Assembly: GCA_002269645.1 (NCBI GenBank)
Contig: NIVC01000393.1
Coordinates: 545,497 to 609,496, forward strand
Reading direction: 5' to 3'
Origin: Macrostomum lignano
Lineage: Eukaryota
Length of the DNA stretch: 64,000 nt
The notes beneath the pieces are model-generated. The model made no database searches. It saw only the letters and a program-made list of their open reading frames with translations, and was not told the origin of the DNA. Positions 50,601-56,600 of the stretch are shown piece after piece. How positions within the stretch are numbered: position 1 is the first letter of the stretch; each line of letters opens with the position of its first letter. The translations under genes were made by a program, and so were the position numbers.

Positions 50601-53600
50601 GCTGGGCACCTTAAGAAAACAATAAAAAGGCGCAGAGCAGACGAGAGAGAAAGGCCGACGCGGATGGAGCTTGACTCAATGTTTGTTGAATTTTTCCCTG
50701 CATACTTTTCCTCATTCCCCAGATACAGACTGCTTATTCTACCCCCACTACCAGCTGCGCGCCCACAGCAATTGCTCACGGATGAGGCCATCGCGAGAGT
50801 ACTTGCAAAATGCCGGATGCATGACTCCCGTACCATGTCGCATGCAGGTACGCCCGCCCCACAAAAGAAGAAGTACCTCTAACAGTGCACAGGTAGGGGT
50901 TGTCTATGAGTATAAAGATGAGCAAGCACTGGGTGGGTAGGTGAGTAGGCCAGCATAGACTCAGTGAGCTCCAAACTTCACCGAGTCCGTTCTCCAGACA
51001 GAGAGGCGTCCTGGCCCCTCACCGTCTTGCTTCCTTGCGCTTGCAACGAAACTTTGAGGAGTGAAATGGGGCGGACTGCTTAGGAAGATGTTGGAGGGGA
51101 GACAGTTTAAACTGAGATGCAGGGAGAGACAGCTGAGACTGAGATGCAGGGAGAGAACGGAGACTGAGATGCAGTGCAGGGAAAGAGCTAAGTGAGATGT
51201 AATGGAAGAGAGCTGAGTGAGATGCAGGGAGACAGCTAAGTGAGATGCAGGGAGAGAACGGAGACTGAGATGCAGTGCAGGGAAAGAGCTGAGTGAGATG
51301 TAATGGGAGAGAGCTGAGTGAGATGCAGGGAGACAGCTGAGAGTGAGATGCAGGGAGACAGCTGAGACTGGGATGCAGGGAGAGACAGCTGAGATTGAGA
51401 TGCAGGGGAAACAGCTGAGATTTCTGTCTCCTCTTGACTTAGCTGCAGGGCTGTCCCGGGGGGACACAGCGGGAAGGCGCGAACGCCCATTCCGCTATTC
51501 TGTCTCCTCAAAATCGAGCAAACAGTGGTACTTGAATCCCTGAACCCCCCCTGGTTTTACGACAATTTCGACTATAAACAGAGTCAGTCGAACGAACAGG
51601 AAATTGTACCGGATGCTCGGTACCTACGAGTAAGCATCCGCAGTCCCCAAACCTTTCTTCCCTCTGATACCCACACTCTCGGAACACACTTCTCAAGCAA
51701 GAGTGTTTTAAAAGTGAGCAGTGTACAGAGCGCCACCCAGTGCGAATGCACTATTAAAAGTTTGCATTGAGTTGGCCGCTGGCTTGCTGGCTGTCGTCAG
51801 TTTTTTGCAGGAAATTTGAGTGTTTATTTTCACTTTGCTGACAAAAACGGCATGCTTTAACGGGAGCCAACGCTCACTAAGAATATGGCCATCGCTCTCA
51901 TATTGCTTTTACTTAAACTTTTTCTACCTTGCTTAGTCTCTACCCTTTATCTCACGGCTTCTACCTTTATCTCTCAGTCTCTCCCTTCATCTCACAGCCT
52001 CTCTCTTCATTTAGAAGCCCATCACTTCATCTAACAGCCTCTCCCTTCATCTCACAGCCTCTCCCTTCATCTAACAGCCTCTCCCTTCCTCTAACAGCCT
52101 CTCCCTTCATTTAACAGCCTCTCCCTTTATCTAACAGCCTCTCCCTTCATCTAACAGCCTCTCCCTTCCTCTAACAGCCTCTCCCTTCCTCTAACAGCCT
52201 CTCCCTTCCTCTAACAGCCTCTCCCTTCCTCTAACAGCCTCTCCCTTTATCTAGCAGCCTCTCACTTTATCTAACAGCCTCTCCCTTCATCTAATAGCCG
52301 CTTTTTATCTCACAACCATTCTGTTTGTCTCATAATCTCCTTCGTTCAATTCATAACATCTCCCTTCATCCCACAGCATCTTCCTTCATTTAGCAGCCTC
52401 ATCCTTCATCCCATGGCTACATCTCACAGCCTCTCCCTTCATTTCTCACTATCTACATTTTAATTTCAGCAAACTTAAAGCCAGTTGGTAATTAGGTTTT
52501 AAAAAATAAAATTCAATGATTGAATGACGATTTTAAGTTTGTATTTGATGCGGCAGACTACGCTACAGTAATCAATACAGCAATAATCTATACATTACAC
52601 AGTTAGTGTATGTAGGCAACTAATTATTAATTACTAACAAATATTTGTCGATTTTTTCAACTCGTCACGCAGCCTATCAATCTCAACAGTTAACTATAAT
52701 AACCGAATGCCTATCAATAACTTGTTGCTAGCCTCTGTTGCTAAGTCAAATCATGTTTGAATGTCAGAGATGTACTTTATTCGGAAGCGAAGCGAAGTGA
52801 TTCATATTTAAATAAAGCACTAATAAAGCGACAGCATGCAGGGGTTTAGTATGTAAAAAAGCTGAAAATTCGCATTGATGCATAATAAAAATTAAAAAGA
52901 TTTCTCTATTTTTACTGCTAGTAGTACAGATCGAAAACGTGACCATTTTGAGTAACAAATAAAAAACAAATTGATTTGCTGCTCCATAAATAAAATATTC
53001 TAACTGATCAACAGCTGTCTGGAATTTTACACAAATCTGGTTAATTTTGTCAAAAAAAATATCTAAATTTGCGCAGTCAACTACTACTTTAGTAGAGACT
53101 GAAGCTTTTAAAAATATTTTAGAACGAAATGAAAAAAAACATCGAAAAAAGACGATTCCGTCTTGCAGTTAAAACAATATTAAAAAACACTCTAAAACAC
53201 GCTTAGACCAGCCGCGCGCGATAAAATTAAGTCACGCCGCGAAAATATTAATAATCGAAGAAAGAGAGCTATAAAACAGAATAAAAAATTGTCATAGGTA
53301 GCGGTTGCTTCTAATATAATGACGGATTCTCATCACCGCAAGCATGGACGGACAGCGCATGATCAGAGAGAATGAATGATTGAGAGAATTTTTGAGCAAC
53401 ATAAAAAGCAGAGCACAACAGGGAGTCAAATTTTGCATGCAGTTGGTTTGCAGTTTTCAAACTGCCGCAGATTTCCTCATCCGTTTGGTGGCGTTCCGCA
53501 TGTCCTGCGCAGTTCGGGCCGCCCTGCCCAGACTGTCATTGAGCTGACGCTGCTGCTGCTGCTGCTGCTGCTTCTGGGGCGGCGGCTGCTTCTGGTTGCC

Positions 53601-56600
53601 CGGCTCCATGAGCATCTGATTGTAGTCTCGGACGAATCTGCGAGAGTCCAGCACTGGCTGGTGCTGGCGGGGAGGCTCCGGCGGCGGCGGCGGCTGCTGC
53701 TGCTGCTGCTGGTGCCCGTTGGCCGTCAGCAGCGGCGGCGCGTCGGAGCGCCAGTGCGGCCTTGTCGGGATGAACTTGTCGAACTTCTCCGGCGACAGGC
53801 CGTAGCGATTTTCGACTCCGCCAATCAGCGGCTGCGGAATCGGCGGAGCCGGCGGAGGCGCGGCTGCCGCGGAGCGACGTCTCGGCGGACTGGGCGACCG
53901 AGGTCGCTTCGACGGTGTCGACGAGGCCGTGGCATCCGCAGCTGGCGGAGCCAGCGAGGCCGCAGTGGGTCGCTGGCGCGGCAGACTGCGAGCTCGAAGC
54001 GACCCGACGGGCTGGTTGTCCTCTGAGAAGCCGAGCGGCCGCTCTGCCGGCCGACGTATGGACTCGGCGGCGACGGAACTGGGCGACGATTTGGTCGGCG
54101 GCGAGGCGACGGCGACGGCGTCTTCGCGACTTCGACGAGCGGCCAGGTCGTCCTGCAGGCCCTTGACGGTGTCGATGATGTGCAGCAGGGCGACGCCGCG
54201 CATTGGCTTGCCGTTGGTGGCGGCAGATGGCGAAGGCGGTGGCGGCGTTTGAGCAGTCTGAGTTCGGCGATGCTTCGGCGTCTGGACGGCGGCTTCCTCG
54301 CGGGCCTCCAAGTCGGTGAGGGTTCGCTGCAGCGAGGCCAGCGGGTCGTCCGACTCGCGGGTGTACGGCCAGAGCTTCTTGGAGATGCCGACGCCGCCGC
54401 CGGAGTTGCGCAGGTCGGACGAGGACCCGGTCGGAGCCAGGTGGTGGTGGTGATGGTGGTGGTGGCCGGGGTAGCCGTGTCCGGGACCGTAAAGTCGGCC
54501 GTCGGTGAGATCCACTGCGCTAGTCGATGGAGTGTTGGACTGCTTGGGCGTCTGCGTTTGCTGGTGGCACACCGTCTGCGTTTGCTGGTCCATCAGCTGG
54601 ACGTTTGGATAGTTTTTTGGGCGAGTTAGTAAAATTGCTCTGCTTGTGGCGCGGCGTGAGTAGAGTAGTAGGAGTTTGAGAACGGATATTTTTAGTATGA
54701 GTCTAGTAGAGAGATGAGACTTTCAGAGTCATGTCAACAGAGATGCGAGTCGTAACCTCATTGTTTAATTTCTCTATACCAAGGTACACGGCTAGTTTTA
54801 TGCACAAGGCCCCTTACGGGGGGGCAATGTGCTAGTCCACTATACTAAACAAAAATACAAGACTGTTTCATATGCGTCGAAGATCACAATCTATTATTGA
54901 TGGAAATCCATAAACTATGCTCTAATGCGTGTCACAAATGACAAGTACAAAATATCGACAAAAGTAATTACCCGTTGGTGTTGTGAGTCCTTCGTAATGT
55001 TTTTTATTATTCTGTGTATTACTCAGTTGAGTACGTTTTTATCTCTTACTGGCATAAAAATCTTTGCATGTATAAACACTGGGGTAGGTATGTAGAGAAT
55101 TGATAATTATATTATTTTATACCCAAACAGTGAACTAAGGTGCAGGCGTGTTAGAACACTCAAATGTTTTAAGCTGTTTTCGTGAGAATATAAGTGAGTT
55201 AGCATTAGATACAAACCTATGAGCACCCGTTAATTAGAGTAGGTGCAATTTTTCAATCAGAGAGATGTGTGGAATGTCTACAGTCCTTATTGTCTGTCTG
55301 TCTGTCTGCCTGTTTGCCTGCCTGCCTGCCTGTGTGTGTGTCTGTCTGTCTGTCTGCCTGTCTATTTTTTCTGTCTGTCTGTCTGTCTGTCTATTTGTCT
55401 ATCTGTCTATCTGCCCTTCTATTTGTCTGTCTTTCTGTTTGTCTGTCTGTCTGTCCGTCCGTCCGTCTGTCTGTCTGTCTGTCTGTCTGTCTGTCTGTCT
55501 GTCTGTCTGTCTGTCTGTCTGTCTGTCTGTCTGTCTGTCTGTCTGTCTGCCTGCCAATCGACCATCTACGTCATATTGAACGAAAGCTCTGTACTTGAAA
55601 AAGCATTCAACACAACATATGTTCCGTTAAATAAAACTGAGCTGTGATGTACAAGTTACTATTCTCTTGCCTCTTGCTGCATTCGTTGCTACACGCTAAC
55701 AGGTGCAAGCGCTAACAGTACAGTGAATTAATCAACGTGCATGTATTAAAAATGAATTCATTCAATCTGGATTATCATATCAGCGATGACAGATATACAG
55801 TTTGGAATGGAATTTATAACGGTAACTTGGATAGATAGAATATGAATGCCAGTTGCATGACTAGCACCGGTCTATAAGACCATAACCTGGATTTGCTTCT
55901 CAAGTCCTTACCGTGGACAGCTGGCTGTCCCGGGCTGCGCTTTGCTGCGAGACGGCAGCAGAGCTGCGCCCGGACATGAGCGCAGCTGTGTACTGAGTTG
56001 AGCACAGTGTGGTTAGCAGGGAGAACTGCAAGTTTTATGCAGTCAAGTTTGCAAGCGTCTTGAAGTTATCAATTATTAATATTATTATTAAATCTAATGA
56101 GGATAAAAAGTATTCGCTACAGAAATTTCTAATTTAAGCAAATTTACCAAACGTACTACTATTTTAGTAATACGATGAAAAGTGCTACAATGCTCGCTGG
56201 AAATGACTATTATTGAGTGTGTTAACTATTAAGTATGTTAAGAAAGGCATAGATTACAGTATATATTTTTTCAATCTGATTAATAATGTTTAGGTATAAT
56301 TCTACAAAAGTTAAACCGAAAGAAATTCTAAACAAATAGTTTATAATTATATTGCATAACCACAGTTAAATTAACCGCCTAATACTATAATCTCTAGGAT
56401 ACTAAGCTATTTTTAGTCTAATGATTTATTAATACCGAGAATAGCCTAAAGGTAAATTGAGATTCAGGTGATGTTGCCAGGAAAAGCAAGATGCTGTGAA
56501 AGAGTTTGCACAGTGAACTGAAGGTGAGTGACGTGAGTGCTGTGTGAGAGACAGGAGGATTAAAGCGCTCACAGTGTTAAAGCAGAGCAAATTAAATCTA

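What the first reader, a model, noticed from the sequence alone, without database searches (positions are those of the whole stretch)
53457..54596. Alternative terminal exon with three TQT (dynein light chain LC8-type) motifs and His8
Seen: DQQTQTV, HQQTQTP and HRRTQTA, plus GHHHHHHHH, Pro- and Gln-rich tracts, a short coiled segment ([13 protein letters not shown]) and a C-terminal helix. Established: LC8/DYNLL binds TQT anchors (K/R-x-T-Q-T is the classic form), often multivalently in disordered regions, and promotes dimerization. Inference: replacing KASH with an LC8-binding disordered tail turns the N-terminal rod into a cytoplasmic dimeric scaffold or motor adaptor.
Basis: partly seen in the sequence, partly recalled or inferred. 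Interest (0 to 1): 0.7.

Follow-up and report, generated by a model that had tools for sequence, protein, structure and literature searches.

The report
KASH-less nesprin tail exon with TQT motifs
This is a real protein-coding last exon of a flatworm (Macrostomum lignano) nesprin-like gene, already present in GenBank gene models; it gives the spectrin-repeat rod a 379-residue floppy tail carrying one strong and two or three weaker predicted docking sites for the dimerising hub protein LC8, which nobody has tested.

Summary
Window 54596..53457 (minus strand) is a 379-codon exon with an AG acceptor and a TGA stop. It holds three TQT motifs, a His8 run, Pro/Gln tracts and predicted helices.

The window is the end of Macrostomum lignano contig NIVC01000393.1. 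Three RNA-seq-derived GenBank models, one per gene copy, splice the spectrin exon (donor 57372) to 54596 and end at this stop. Linkage to a nesprin-like rod (Pfam Spectrin and Spectrin_SYNE1) and terminal use are therefore supported.

"Alternative" is plausible but not shown. Skipping to 48428 keeps the frame and the downstream exons are conserved, but no transcript-based model joins them. A KASH-like exon lies at 2658..2451 but does not match Pfam KASH.

On LC8:
- All TQTs lie in predicted disorder, and there are none in 2,697 residues of rod.
- CHQQTQTP scores like strong binders. MDQQTQTV and KHRRTQTA score weakly.
- The first two motifs abut with no linker, so they probably cannot both be occupied.

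LC8 is regarded as a dimerisation hub, so "dimeric scaffold" is likelier than "motor adaptor". The tail has no homologue outside M. lignano. Binding is untested. Interest is modest.

The parts
53457..54596 (-). 3'-terminal coding exon: 379 codons plus TGA, encoding the disordered tail
   Evidence: ORF and translation. It is the last exon of P0005/PAA83973.1, which maps uniquely onto the window. It is more conserved than the introns and has only in-frame indels.
54597..54598 (-). AG splice acceptor (context aaacgtccag|CTGATG)
   Evidence: It resembles the acceptor of the preceding exon (aaaactccag|TCCAAT). It also partly fits the M. lignano trans-splice acceptor motif [T/C]TNCAG.
57372..57782 (-). 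Upstream spectrin-repeat exon; its GTGAGT donor after 57372 joins to 54596 in phase 0
   Evidence: The junction ...QVDYMR|LMDQQTQTV is present in P0001, P0002, P0003, P0005, P0007 and P0008.
54570..54593 (-). Candidate LC8 8-mer 1, MDQQTQTV (residues 2-9)
   Evidence: TQT anchor, with D at -4. V at +2 is disfavoured. Low to middling PSSM score. pLDDT is below 50.
54546..54569 (-). Candidate LC8 8-mer 2, CHQQTQTP (residues 10-17); the best-scoring site
   Evidence: It scores above 91% of known binders and above all non-binders in a PSSM built from the binder and non-binder lists of PMC6607443. It lies in predicted disorder.
54276..54299 (-). Weaker variant anchor EEAAVQTP (residues 100-107), abutting motif 3
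   Evidence: It sits at the C-terminal edge of helix 85-103. It was not scored.
54252..54275 (-). Candidate LC8 8-mer 3, KHRRTQTA (residues 108-115), between two predicted helices
   Evidence: R at -3 fits the K/R preference. The cluster of positive charges and R at -2 lower its score.
54441..54464 (-). His8 tract (residues 45-52)
54108..54197 (-). Predicted amphipathic helix 134-163 ([21 protein letters not shown]), with 3-4 hydrophobic spacing; a possible short dimerisation helix
   Evidence: AlphaFold2 helix with pLDDT 58-79. The heptad reading is my own inference from the sequence.
53874..53909 (-). [12 protein letters not shown]: a basic and Ser/Pro stretch that looks like a nuclear-localisation or RS element
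   Evidence: The functional reading is inference only.
53463..53573 (-). C-terminal helix 342-378 (poly-Q followed by a basic amphipathic stretch, KRMRK)
   Evidence: AlphaFold2 pLDDT 94-95.
52776..52781 (-). First AATAAA after the stop codon, 676 nt downstream; candidate poly(A) signal
   Evidence: Its use was not verified.
55912..56025 (-). Unannotated 114-nt candidate cassette exon (AG acceptor, GTAAGG donor, open in phase 0)
   Evidence: It is 114/114 identical in both paralogues, against about 2% intron divergence. It is in none of the eight protein models.
48310..48428 (-). Next downstream rod exon; its acceptor is in phase 0, so 57372 to 48428 (skipping the tail exon) keeps the reading frame
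   Evidence: It is 119/119 identical to L002, while the flanking introns are 84-97% identical.
2451..2658 (-). KASH-like last exon of the locus: a transmembrane helix plus a 24-residue C-terminal peptide ending in GLPY
   Evidence: It does not match Pfam KASH or any PDB chain. A WSC-domain exon of another gene follows at 1-240.

Best explanation
Window 54596..53457 (minus strand) is a genuine 3'-terminal coding exon of a Macrostomum lignano nesprin-like giant gene (gene family Mlig001789). Splicing from the spectrin exon that ends at 57372 into this exon stops translation about 51 kb before the KASH-like last exon. The product is a KASH-less spectrin-repeat rod with a 379-residue tail that is lineage-specific and mostly disordered.

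Shown:
- the exon, the junction and its terminal use;
- purifying selection on the exon;
- the nesprin-type rod.

Inferred mechanism: the tail is an LC8/DYNLL-recruiting dimerisation module. An LC8 dimer docks on the TQT strands of two tails. CHQQTQTP is the primary site. The abutting MDQQTQTV is probably an alternative register rather than a second occupied site. KHRRTQTA, with or without EEAAVQTP, is a second rung about 95 residues away, next to the amphipathic helices 85-103 and 134-163. This would zip two rods into a parallel dimer. The result would be a cytoplasmic, or possibly nuclear, dimeric scaffold rather than a dynein cargo adaptor.

My confidence is about 0.9 for the exon, junction and terminal-use part and about 0.5 for the LC8 part. 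The figure given below is for the whole statement.
For: Identity and linkage:
- An exhaustive phmmer search found a single cluster, all of it M. lignano.
- PAA83973.1 maps uniquely onto the window as five GT-AG exons ending at 53457. The window is the end of NIVC01000393.1.
- The paralogous models PAA89195.1 and PAA50447.1 have the same junction and the same end.
- These GenBank models come from StringTie/TACO/TBONE/TransDecoder runs on RNA-seq. TACO was run with --isoform-frac 0.75, so I read the annotated end as that of the dominant isoform (PMC5730564).

Coding status:
- The exon is 99.1-99.5% identical between copies, against 96.7-98.9% for introns. Indels are in frame only.
- Half of the substitutions are synonymous, and all non-synonymous changes fall in residues 190-302. 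None touches the TQT, His8 or helix regions.
- GC3 is 0.79.

Rod: Pfam Spectrin (E = 8e-44) and Spectrin_SYNE1 (E = 5e-23).

LC8:
- There are three perfect TQT anchors, with P = 4e-4 for three and about 1% for two. There are none in 2,697 rod residues.
- All lie in segments with pLDDT below 50 and no secondary structure.
- The flanks obey the published rules: polar at -4, large at -3, no aromatic at -2, no internal proline.
- CHQQTQTP outscores 91% of binders and all non-binders.
- Weak motifs are known to bind when they are multivalent or lie next to coiled coils.
- LC8 is accepted as a dimerisation hub.
Against: - There are no binding data.
- The tail has no detectable homologue outside M. 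lignano among 1.84 billion representative proteins. The paralogues are about 99% identical. Motif conservation therefore cannot be used as evidence.
- Motifs 1 and 3 score near the non-binder median in my PSSM. V at +2 and clustered like charges are listed as unfavourable.
- Motifs 1 and 2, and the VQT site and motif 3, abut with no linker. The shortest validated linker is 3 residues.
- The first 25 residues are locally rich in Q and T, and the pair of motifs is one tandem duplication, so effectively there are only two independent occurrences.
- My PSSM is a rough stand-in for LC8Pred (leave-one-out AUC 0.73-0.79).
- In the published benchmark only 7 of 19 PSSM-predicted peptides bound.
- The disorder call rests on a single-sequence AlphaFold2 model.
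Confidence: 0.5

Rival explanations
1. The exon is a real KASH-less terminal exon, but the TQT triplets are incidental products of a Q/T-rich low-complexity segment. The tail would then do something else. One possibility is nuclear or speckle targeting through [17 protein letters not shown] and the His8 tract. Another is that it simply acts as a premature-termination exon that sets how much full-length KASH-bearing nesprin is made.
For: - The local Q/T richness and the single 8-residue duplication reduce the number of independent TQT events to two.
- Two of the three motifs score like non-binders.
- No conservation data are available.
- Basic NLS-like and RS-like stretches and a His8 run are present.
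- Mammalian nesprins produce many KASH-less isoforms by alternative termination, with varied localisations that include the nucleus (PMC3388047).
Against: - CHQQTQTP scores as a strong binder.
- TQT and looser anchors are absent from 2,697 rod residues and from the 2,612-residue disordered repeat exon, yet four cluster in the first 115 residues of the tail.
- They lie in disorder next to helices, which is the usual setting for LC8 sites.
- No substitution between copies touches them, although this test has little power.
Confidence: 0.33
2. The ORF is a separate nested gene. Its mRNA would be made by spliced-leader trans-splicing onto the 54598/54597 acceptor and would encode a stand-alone protein of about 380 residues. 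On this view the cis-spliced models reflect precursor or chimeric transcript assemblies.
For: - An ATG lies 3 nt after the acceptor.
- The M. lignano spliced leader ends in ATG, which would also be in frame with CTG ATG.
- The acceptor tccag partly fits the trans-splice motif [T/C]TNCAG.
- About 30-39% of M. lignano genes are trans-spliced and about 7% of assembled transcripts are polycistronic precursors.
- The tail has no similarity to any nesprin.
Against: - Three independently annotated copies keep the cis junction inside the CDS.
- The TBONE pipeline cuts transcriptional units at experimentally detected trans-splice peaks, and it did not cut here.
- The junction is in frame.
- No stand-alone gene product with this sequence is on record.
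- An upstream cis donor is available, and this disfavours trans-splicing.
Confidence: 0.1
3. The exon is not terminal. An internal donor near 53634 or 53617 is used, so that most of the TQT-bearing segment becomes an insert within the rod of longer, KASH-bearing isoforms, as in the WormBase ParaSite/UniProt models A0A1I8GC33 and A0A1I8IAP0.
For: Models P0001, P0007 and P0008 leave the exon after ...PRQHQP or ...DSRRF and continue in frame into exons 48428..48310 and 47968..47753.
Against: - The two model sets disagree on which donor is used.
- Both donors (GTGCTG and GTCCGA) miss the M. lignano donor consensus GT[G/A]AG, which every other donor I read in this gene matches at positions +3 to +5 apart from GTTAGT at 46454.
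- All RNA-seq-based models read through to the stop codon.
- The 77 residues after these donors include the most confidently predicted helix and carry only one synonymous change between copies.
Confidence: 0.04

Closest known systems
KASH-less nesprin-1/-2 variants made by alternative 3' termination in mammals (Rajgor et al. 2012, PMC3388047)
   Same: A giant spectrin-repeat nesprin locus produces rod-only isoforms. They end at an internal site, carry a unique C-terminal peptide and lack KASH.
   Different: In mammals the unique ends are short peptides read from retained intron sequence. Here a dedicated, properly spliced 1,140-nt exon adds a 379-residue conserved tail with candidate short linear motifs. 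In the RNA-seq-based annotation it is the only 3' end of the upstream exons.
Multivalent LC8/DYNLL partners with TQT motifs in disordered regions (ASCIZ/ATMIN, Chica/FAM83D, Nup159, dynein intermediate chain, Swallow; LC8Hub, PMC6607443)
   Same: The tail has TQT anchors in disordered sequence, several sites per chain, sites next to helices, and flanks with QTQT as in FDTQTQTD, YTKQTQTT and LDKQTQTP.
   Different: Binding is untested. Two pairs of sites abut with no linker, whereas validated linkers are 3 residues or longer. No paper in the searched library contains LC8, nesprin and TQT together, and I did not open the seven that mention dynein light chain, nesprin and LC8. There is no sequence homology to any known partner.
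Drosophila Klarsicht isoform in which an alternative 3' exon replaces KASH with a lipid-droplet (LD) targeting domain (from my own knowledge; not checked here)
   Same: The logic is the same: an alternative C-terminal exon swaps nuclear-envelope anchoring for a different targeting or interaction module on a KASH-family protein.
   Different: The protein family is different (Klarsicht has no spectrin rod) and so is the module. No sequence relationship was detected.

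Membership tests
LC8/DYNLL-binding partner (TQT-type short linear motif) | Anchor triplet TQT (or a close variant) at positions -1, 0 and +1 | tested here: met
   Three exact TQT triplets at residues 6-8, 14-16 and 112-114, plus VQT at 104-106.
LC8/DYNLL-binding partner (TQT-type short linear motif) | Flanks compatible with the published rules: -4 polar and not hydrophobic, -3 large, -2 not a bulky aromatic, +2 preferably P/D/E and not hydrophobic, no internal Pro, no clustered like charges | tested here: inconclusive
   CHQQTQTP meets all the rules and outscores 91% of binders. 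MDQQTQTV has V at +2. KHRRTQTA has three or four positive charges. Both of these score near the non-binder median in a home-made PSSM. LC8Pred itself could not be run.
LC8/DYNLL-binding partner (TQT-type short linear motif) | Motif lies in an intrinsically disordered region | tested here: met
   All the motifs fall in segments with pLDDT below 50 and no DSSP secondary structure. The caveat is that the model was made from a single sequence.
LC8/DYNLL-binding partner (TQT-type short linear motif) | Spacing between motifs allows simultaneous occupancy (validated linkers are 3 residues or longer) | tested here: not met
   Motifs 1 and 2, and VQT and motif 3, are adjacent 8-mers with no linker, against a shortest validated linker of 3 residues. 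The two clusters are about 90 residues apart, which is permissive.
LC8/DYNLL-binding partner (TQT-type short linear motif) | Evolutionary conservation of the motif | tested here: inconclusive
   No homologue was found outside M. lignano. The motifs are identical in all paralogous copies, but those copies are about 99% identical overall.
LC8/DYNLL-binding partner (TQT-type short linear motif) | Direct physical binding to the LC8 dimer groove | not testable with these tools
   This needs ITC, pull-down or NMR, or at least a multimer structure prediction with LC8.
Nesprin (KASH-domain spectrin-repeat protein) | Long rod of nesprin-type spectrin repeats | tested here: met
   P0002 matches Pfam Spectrin at E = 8e-44 (7 stretches) and Spectrin_SYNE1 at E = 5e-23, both above the curated cut-offs. 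Window exons also hit Spectrin.
Nesprin (KASH-domain spectrin-repeat protein) | C-terminal KASH domain: a transmembrane helix plus a luminal peptide of about 30 residues ending in PPPX | tested here: inconclusive
   The exon at 2658..2451 encodes a transmembrane segment ([20 protein letters not shown]) and 24 residues ending in GLPY, and it is the last exon before the next gene. It has no Pfam KASH hit, no PDB hit and no database homologue.
Nesprin (KASH-domain spectrin-repeat protein) | N-terminal calponin-homology actin-binding domain (in giant isoforms) | not tested
   The 5' part of the gene lies beyond the end of the contig and window.
KASH-less nesprin isoform by alternative 3' termination | Transcript-supported junction from a rod exon into a unique exon with an in-frame stop | tested here: met
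   The 57372 to 54596 junction and the stop at 53457 are present in three RNA-seq-derived GenBank models.
KASH-less nesprin isoform by alternative 3' termination | Poly(A) signal and site downstream of the stop codon | tested here: inconclusive
   AATAAA is at 52781..52776, 676 nt after the stop. I could not look at 3'-end tag data.
KASH-less nesprin isoform by alternative 3' termination | Coexisting transcripts that skip the exon and reach the KASH exon | not testable with these tools
   Skipping is frame-compatible and the downstream exons are conserved. The next annotated CDS starts at an internal ATG at 46110. No transcript-based model joins the two parts.

The most novel reading that the evidence does not exclude
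A flatworm nesprin uses a lineage-specific, spliced-on disordered tail to recruit LC8. LC8 then zips two KASH-less spectrin-repeat rods into a parallel dimer. As far as my three literature searches show, this would be the first direct nesprin-LC8 link, and an example of a newly evolved exon bringing a hub-binding short linear motif module into an ancient scaffold gene. A further possibility is that the same acceptor also serves spliced-leader trans-splicing, so that one exon would yield both a fused tail and a free protein.
Probability: 0.4. Interest if true: 0.5.

Novelty: new variant of a known kind. Interest (0 to 1): 0.3.

Why it matters
If the tail really binds LC8, it would give a concrete and easily testable way for a KASH-less nesprin isoform to dimerise and act away from the nuclear envelope. 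It would also show how a young, disordered terminal exon can plug an old scaffold protein into a hub network. M. lignano can be made transgenic (PMC5730564), so the test is practical.

If the tail does not bind LC8, the finding reduces to an already-annotated isoform of a hypothetical protein in a genome with several near-identical copies. That would be of only local interest.

Tried and rejected
- The word-indexed homologue search was run three times: with the tail, with an upstream-plus-downstream exon composite meant to catch exon-skipping models, and with the KASH-like peptide. It returned nothing, not even the M. lignano proteins that contain exact matches. These nulls therefore say nothing.
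- An exact look-up of the stand-alone 378-residue ORF found no record.
- A Pfam scan of the tail gave no family.
- A Pfam scan of the spliced rod across the 57372|48428 junction was meant to show whether a spectrin repeat spans it. It gave no usable spectrin hit.
- The KASH-like peptide had no Pfam KASH hit, and its only PDB hits were chance matches to transporters.
- I first took the UniRef names 'KASH/GAR/PH domain-containing protein' for the cluster members as domain evidence. I rejected this because Pfam finds only spectrin families in P0002 and P0005 and none in the tail exon.
- The reading 'chance ORF in GC-rich DNA' was rejected on conservation, in-frame indels and transcript models.
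- Tandem-repeat analysis found no DNA repeat inside the exon.
- Viral peptides in the published LC8 table were left out of my scoring matrix on purpose.

Full report
**What is there.** On the minus strand, window 54596..53457 follows an AG acceptor (54598-54597) and reads as 379 codons followed by TGA.
- A single-sequence AlphaFold2 model puts helices at residues 85-103, 134-163, 318-329 and 342-378. The last has pLDDT of about 95. The rest, including every TQT, is low-confidence coil.
- Under composition-preserving shuffles, three or more TQT triplets occur with P = 4e-4 and two or more with P of about 1%. The second figure is the fairer one, because motifs 1 and 2 are a single 8-residue tandem duplication.
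- A fourth, weaker anchor (EEAAVQTP) abuts motif 3.
- The 2,697 rod residues upstream in P0003 contain no TQT and no [TSVI]Q[TV] match. The only other TQT triplets in the minus-strand frames are non-coding.

**Whose gene it is.** Pfam finds nothing in the tail. An exhaustive phmmer search of 1.84 billion representative proteins found one cluster. All eight of its members come from the flatworm Macrostomum lignano.
- PAA83973.1 (P0005, BOX15_Mlig001789g10) sits on NIVC01000393.1 of assembly GCA_002269645.1, and the window is the last 64 kb of that contig, reversed.
- P0005 maps uniquely onto the window as five GT-AG exons: 63084-63007, 60595-60098, 59044-58628, 57782-57372 and 54596-53457. It ends at the exon's stop codon.
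- The paralogous models PAA89195.1 (2,097 aa, locus L002) and PAA50447.1 (3,075 aa, locus L003) have the same ...QVDYMR|LMDQQTQTV junction and the same end.
- These GenBank models derive from RNA-seq through StringTie/TACO, TBONE (which cuts transcripts at experimentally detected trans-splice and poly(A) sites) and TransDecoder. TACO was run with --isoform-frac 0.75, so I read the annotated end as that of the dominant isoform (PMC5730564).
- The rod matches Pfam Spectrin and Spectrin_SYNE1 above the curated cut-offs.

**Is the exon coding?** Yes.
- GC3 is 0.79, as in the neighbouring exons.
- Against L002 and L003 the exon is 99.5% and 99.1% identical, while the flanking introns are 96.7-98.9% identical. 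All gaps are multiples of three.
- Eight of 16 substitutions are synonymous. All non-synonymous changes fall in residues 190-302, and none falls in the TQT, His8 or helix parts.
- The counts are small, but they point to moderate purifying selection of the kind typical for disordered regions.

**Alternative or constitutive?**
- The next rod exon starts at 48428 in phase 0, so skipping the tail exon keeps the frame.
- The downstream exons are 98.4-100% identical between copies, while the two long flanking introns are only 84-87% identical.
- The locus runs on to a tail-anchor exon at 2658..2451. This encodes a transmembrane helix plus 24 residues ending in GLPY. It is followed by a WSC-domain exon of another gene at 1-240.
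- No transcript-based model joins the upstream exons to these downstream ones. The next annotated CDS begins at an internal ATG at 46110.
- Only the ab initio UniProt/ParaSite models P0001, P0007 and P0008 continue. They use two different internal donors, GTGCTG and GTCCGA. Neither fits the species' donor consensus GT[G/A]AG, which every other donor I read in this gene fits at +3 to +5 apart from GTTAGT at 46454.
- 'Terminal' is therefore shown. 'Alternative' and 'replacing KASH' are reasonable but unproven. The KASH-like exon fails Pfam and PDB recognition.

**LC8.** The published rules (PMC6607443) ask for a TQT-type anchor, a polar non-hydrophobic -4, a large -3, no bulky aromatic at -2, a +2 that is preferably P/D/E and not hydrophobic, no internal proline and no clustered like charges.
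- CHQQTQTP meets all of these. MDQQTQTV has V at +2. KHRRTQTA carries a cluster of positive charges.
- I built a PSSM from the paper's non-viral binder and non-binder lists. Its leave-one-out AUC is 0.73-0.79.
- With it, CHQQTQTP scores above 91% of binders and above every non-binder. The other two score near the non-binder median.
- Weak sites are known to bind when helped by multivalency or adjacent coiled coils. Motif 3 lies between two predicted helices.
- Motifs 1 and 2, and VQT and motif 3, are adjacent 8-mers with no linker. The shortest validated linker is 3 residues, and even that gives off-register complexes (PMC10046861). I therefore expect at most one LC8 dimer per pair.
- The field regards LC8 as a dimerisation hub and not a dynein cargo adaptor.
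- No paper in the searched library contains LC8, nesprin and TQT together. Seven papers mention dynein light chain, nesprin and LC8; I did not open them.

**Rivals.**
- (a) The TQT triplets are incidental, and the tail instead targets the protein to the nucleus ([17 protein letters not shown], His8) or merely truncates it.
- (b) The ORF is a nested gene made by spliced-leader trans-splicing. An ATG lies 3 nt after the acceptor, the M. lignano spliced leader ends in an ATG that would be in frame, and trans-splicing is common in this species. Against this, three annotated copies keep the cis junction and TBONE did not cut there.
- (c) The exon is internal and uses the weak donors.

**Comparison with what is known.** KASH-less nesprin isoforms made by alternative termination are well documented in mammals. 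There the unique ends are short peptides read from retained introns (PMC3388047). Here a dedicated spliced exon adds a 379-residue conserved tail with candidate LC8 motifs. It is a new variant of a known kind. It is already deposited as part of 'hypothetical protein' models, and the LC8 function is unproven.

**Verdict.**
- The exon, its junction and its terminal use are well supported (about 0.9).
- LC8-mediated dimerisation is plausible (about 0.5).
- Overall interest is modest.

Noticed in passing
window 27936..35774 (-): A single 2,612-codon open exon lies inside the same gene. It is made almost entirely of tandem S/P/A/E/T-rich peptide repeats: an 11-residue unit ([11 protein letters not shown]) repeated many times and a unit of about 24 residues ([24 protein letters not shown]). 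It looks like a huge mucin-like or PEVK-like disordered spacer within a nesprin rod. It contains no TQT.
   Followed up: no
window 2451..2658 (-): A KASH-like tail-anchor last exon encodes a transmembrane helix plus a 24-residue C-terminal peptide ending in GLPY rather than PPPX. Pfam KASH and PDB do not recognise it, and no homologue turned up in the word-indexed search.
   Followed up: partly
window 1..240 (-): This exon encodes a WSC domain (Pfam PF01822, E = 9e-11). It belongs to a different gene immediately downstream on the same strand and so marks the 3' limit of the nesprin-like locus.
   Followed up: partly
window 55912..56025 (-): An unannotated 114-nt candidate cassette exon sits between the spectrin exon and the tail exon. 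It has an AG acceptor and a GTAAGG donor and is open in phase 0 ([38 protein letters not shown]). It is 100% identical in both paralogues, although the surrounding introns differ by about 2%. It is in none of the protein models.
   Followed up: partly
window 47443..47498: An interstitial telomere-type repeat, (TTAGGG) x 9.7, lies inside an intron of the gene.
   Followed up: no
window 49667..50442 and 55291..55553: The introns contain very long microsatellites: (AGAT) x 194 and (TGTC) x 65. They create long spurious ORFs such as LSIYLSIY... on the minus strand.
   Followed up: no
window 26191..27285 (-): A 364-codon ORF with no spectrin character and no Pfam match ([11 protein letters not shown]...[10 protein letters not shown]...) lies between rod exons. 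It could be another lineage-specific insert in the rod.
   Followed up: partly
cluster of P0001-P0008: UniRef names near-identical M. lignano models 'KASH', 'GAR' or 'PH domain-containing protein'. Pfam finds only spectrin families in the two models scanned (P0002, P0005) and none in the tail exon. The names look like automatic guesses rather than domain hits.
   Followed up: partly
window 46110 (-); locus L001 17891: The next annotated CDS downstream (1,018 aa) starts at an internal Met in the middle of a rod exon. This suggests that the annotation splits one giant locus into several transcript pieces, or that an internal promoter or trans-splice site gives C-terminal isoforms.
   Followed up: no
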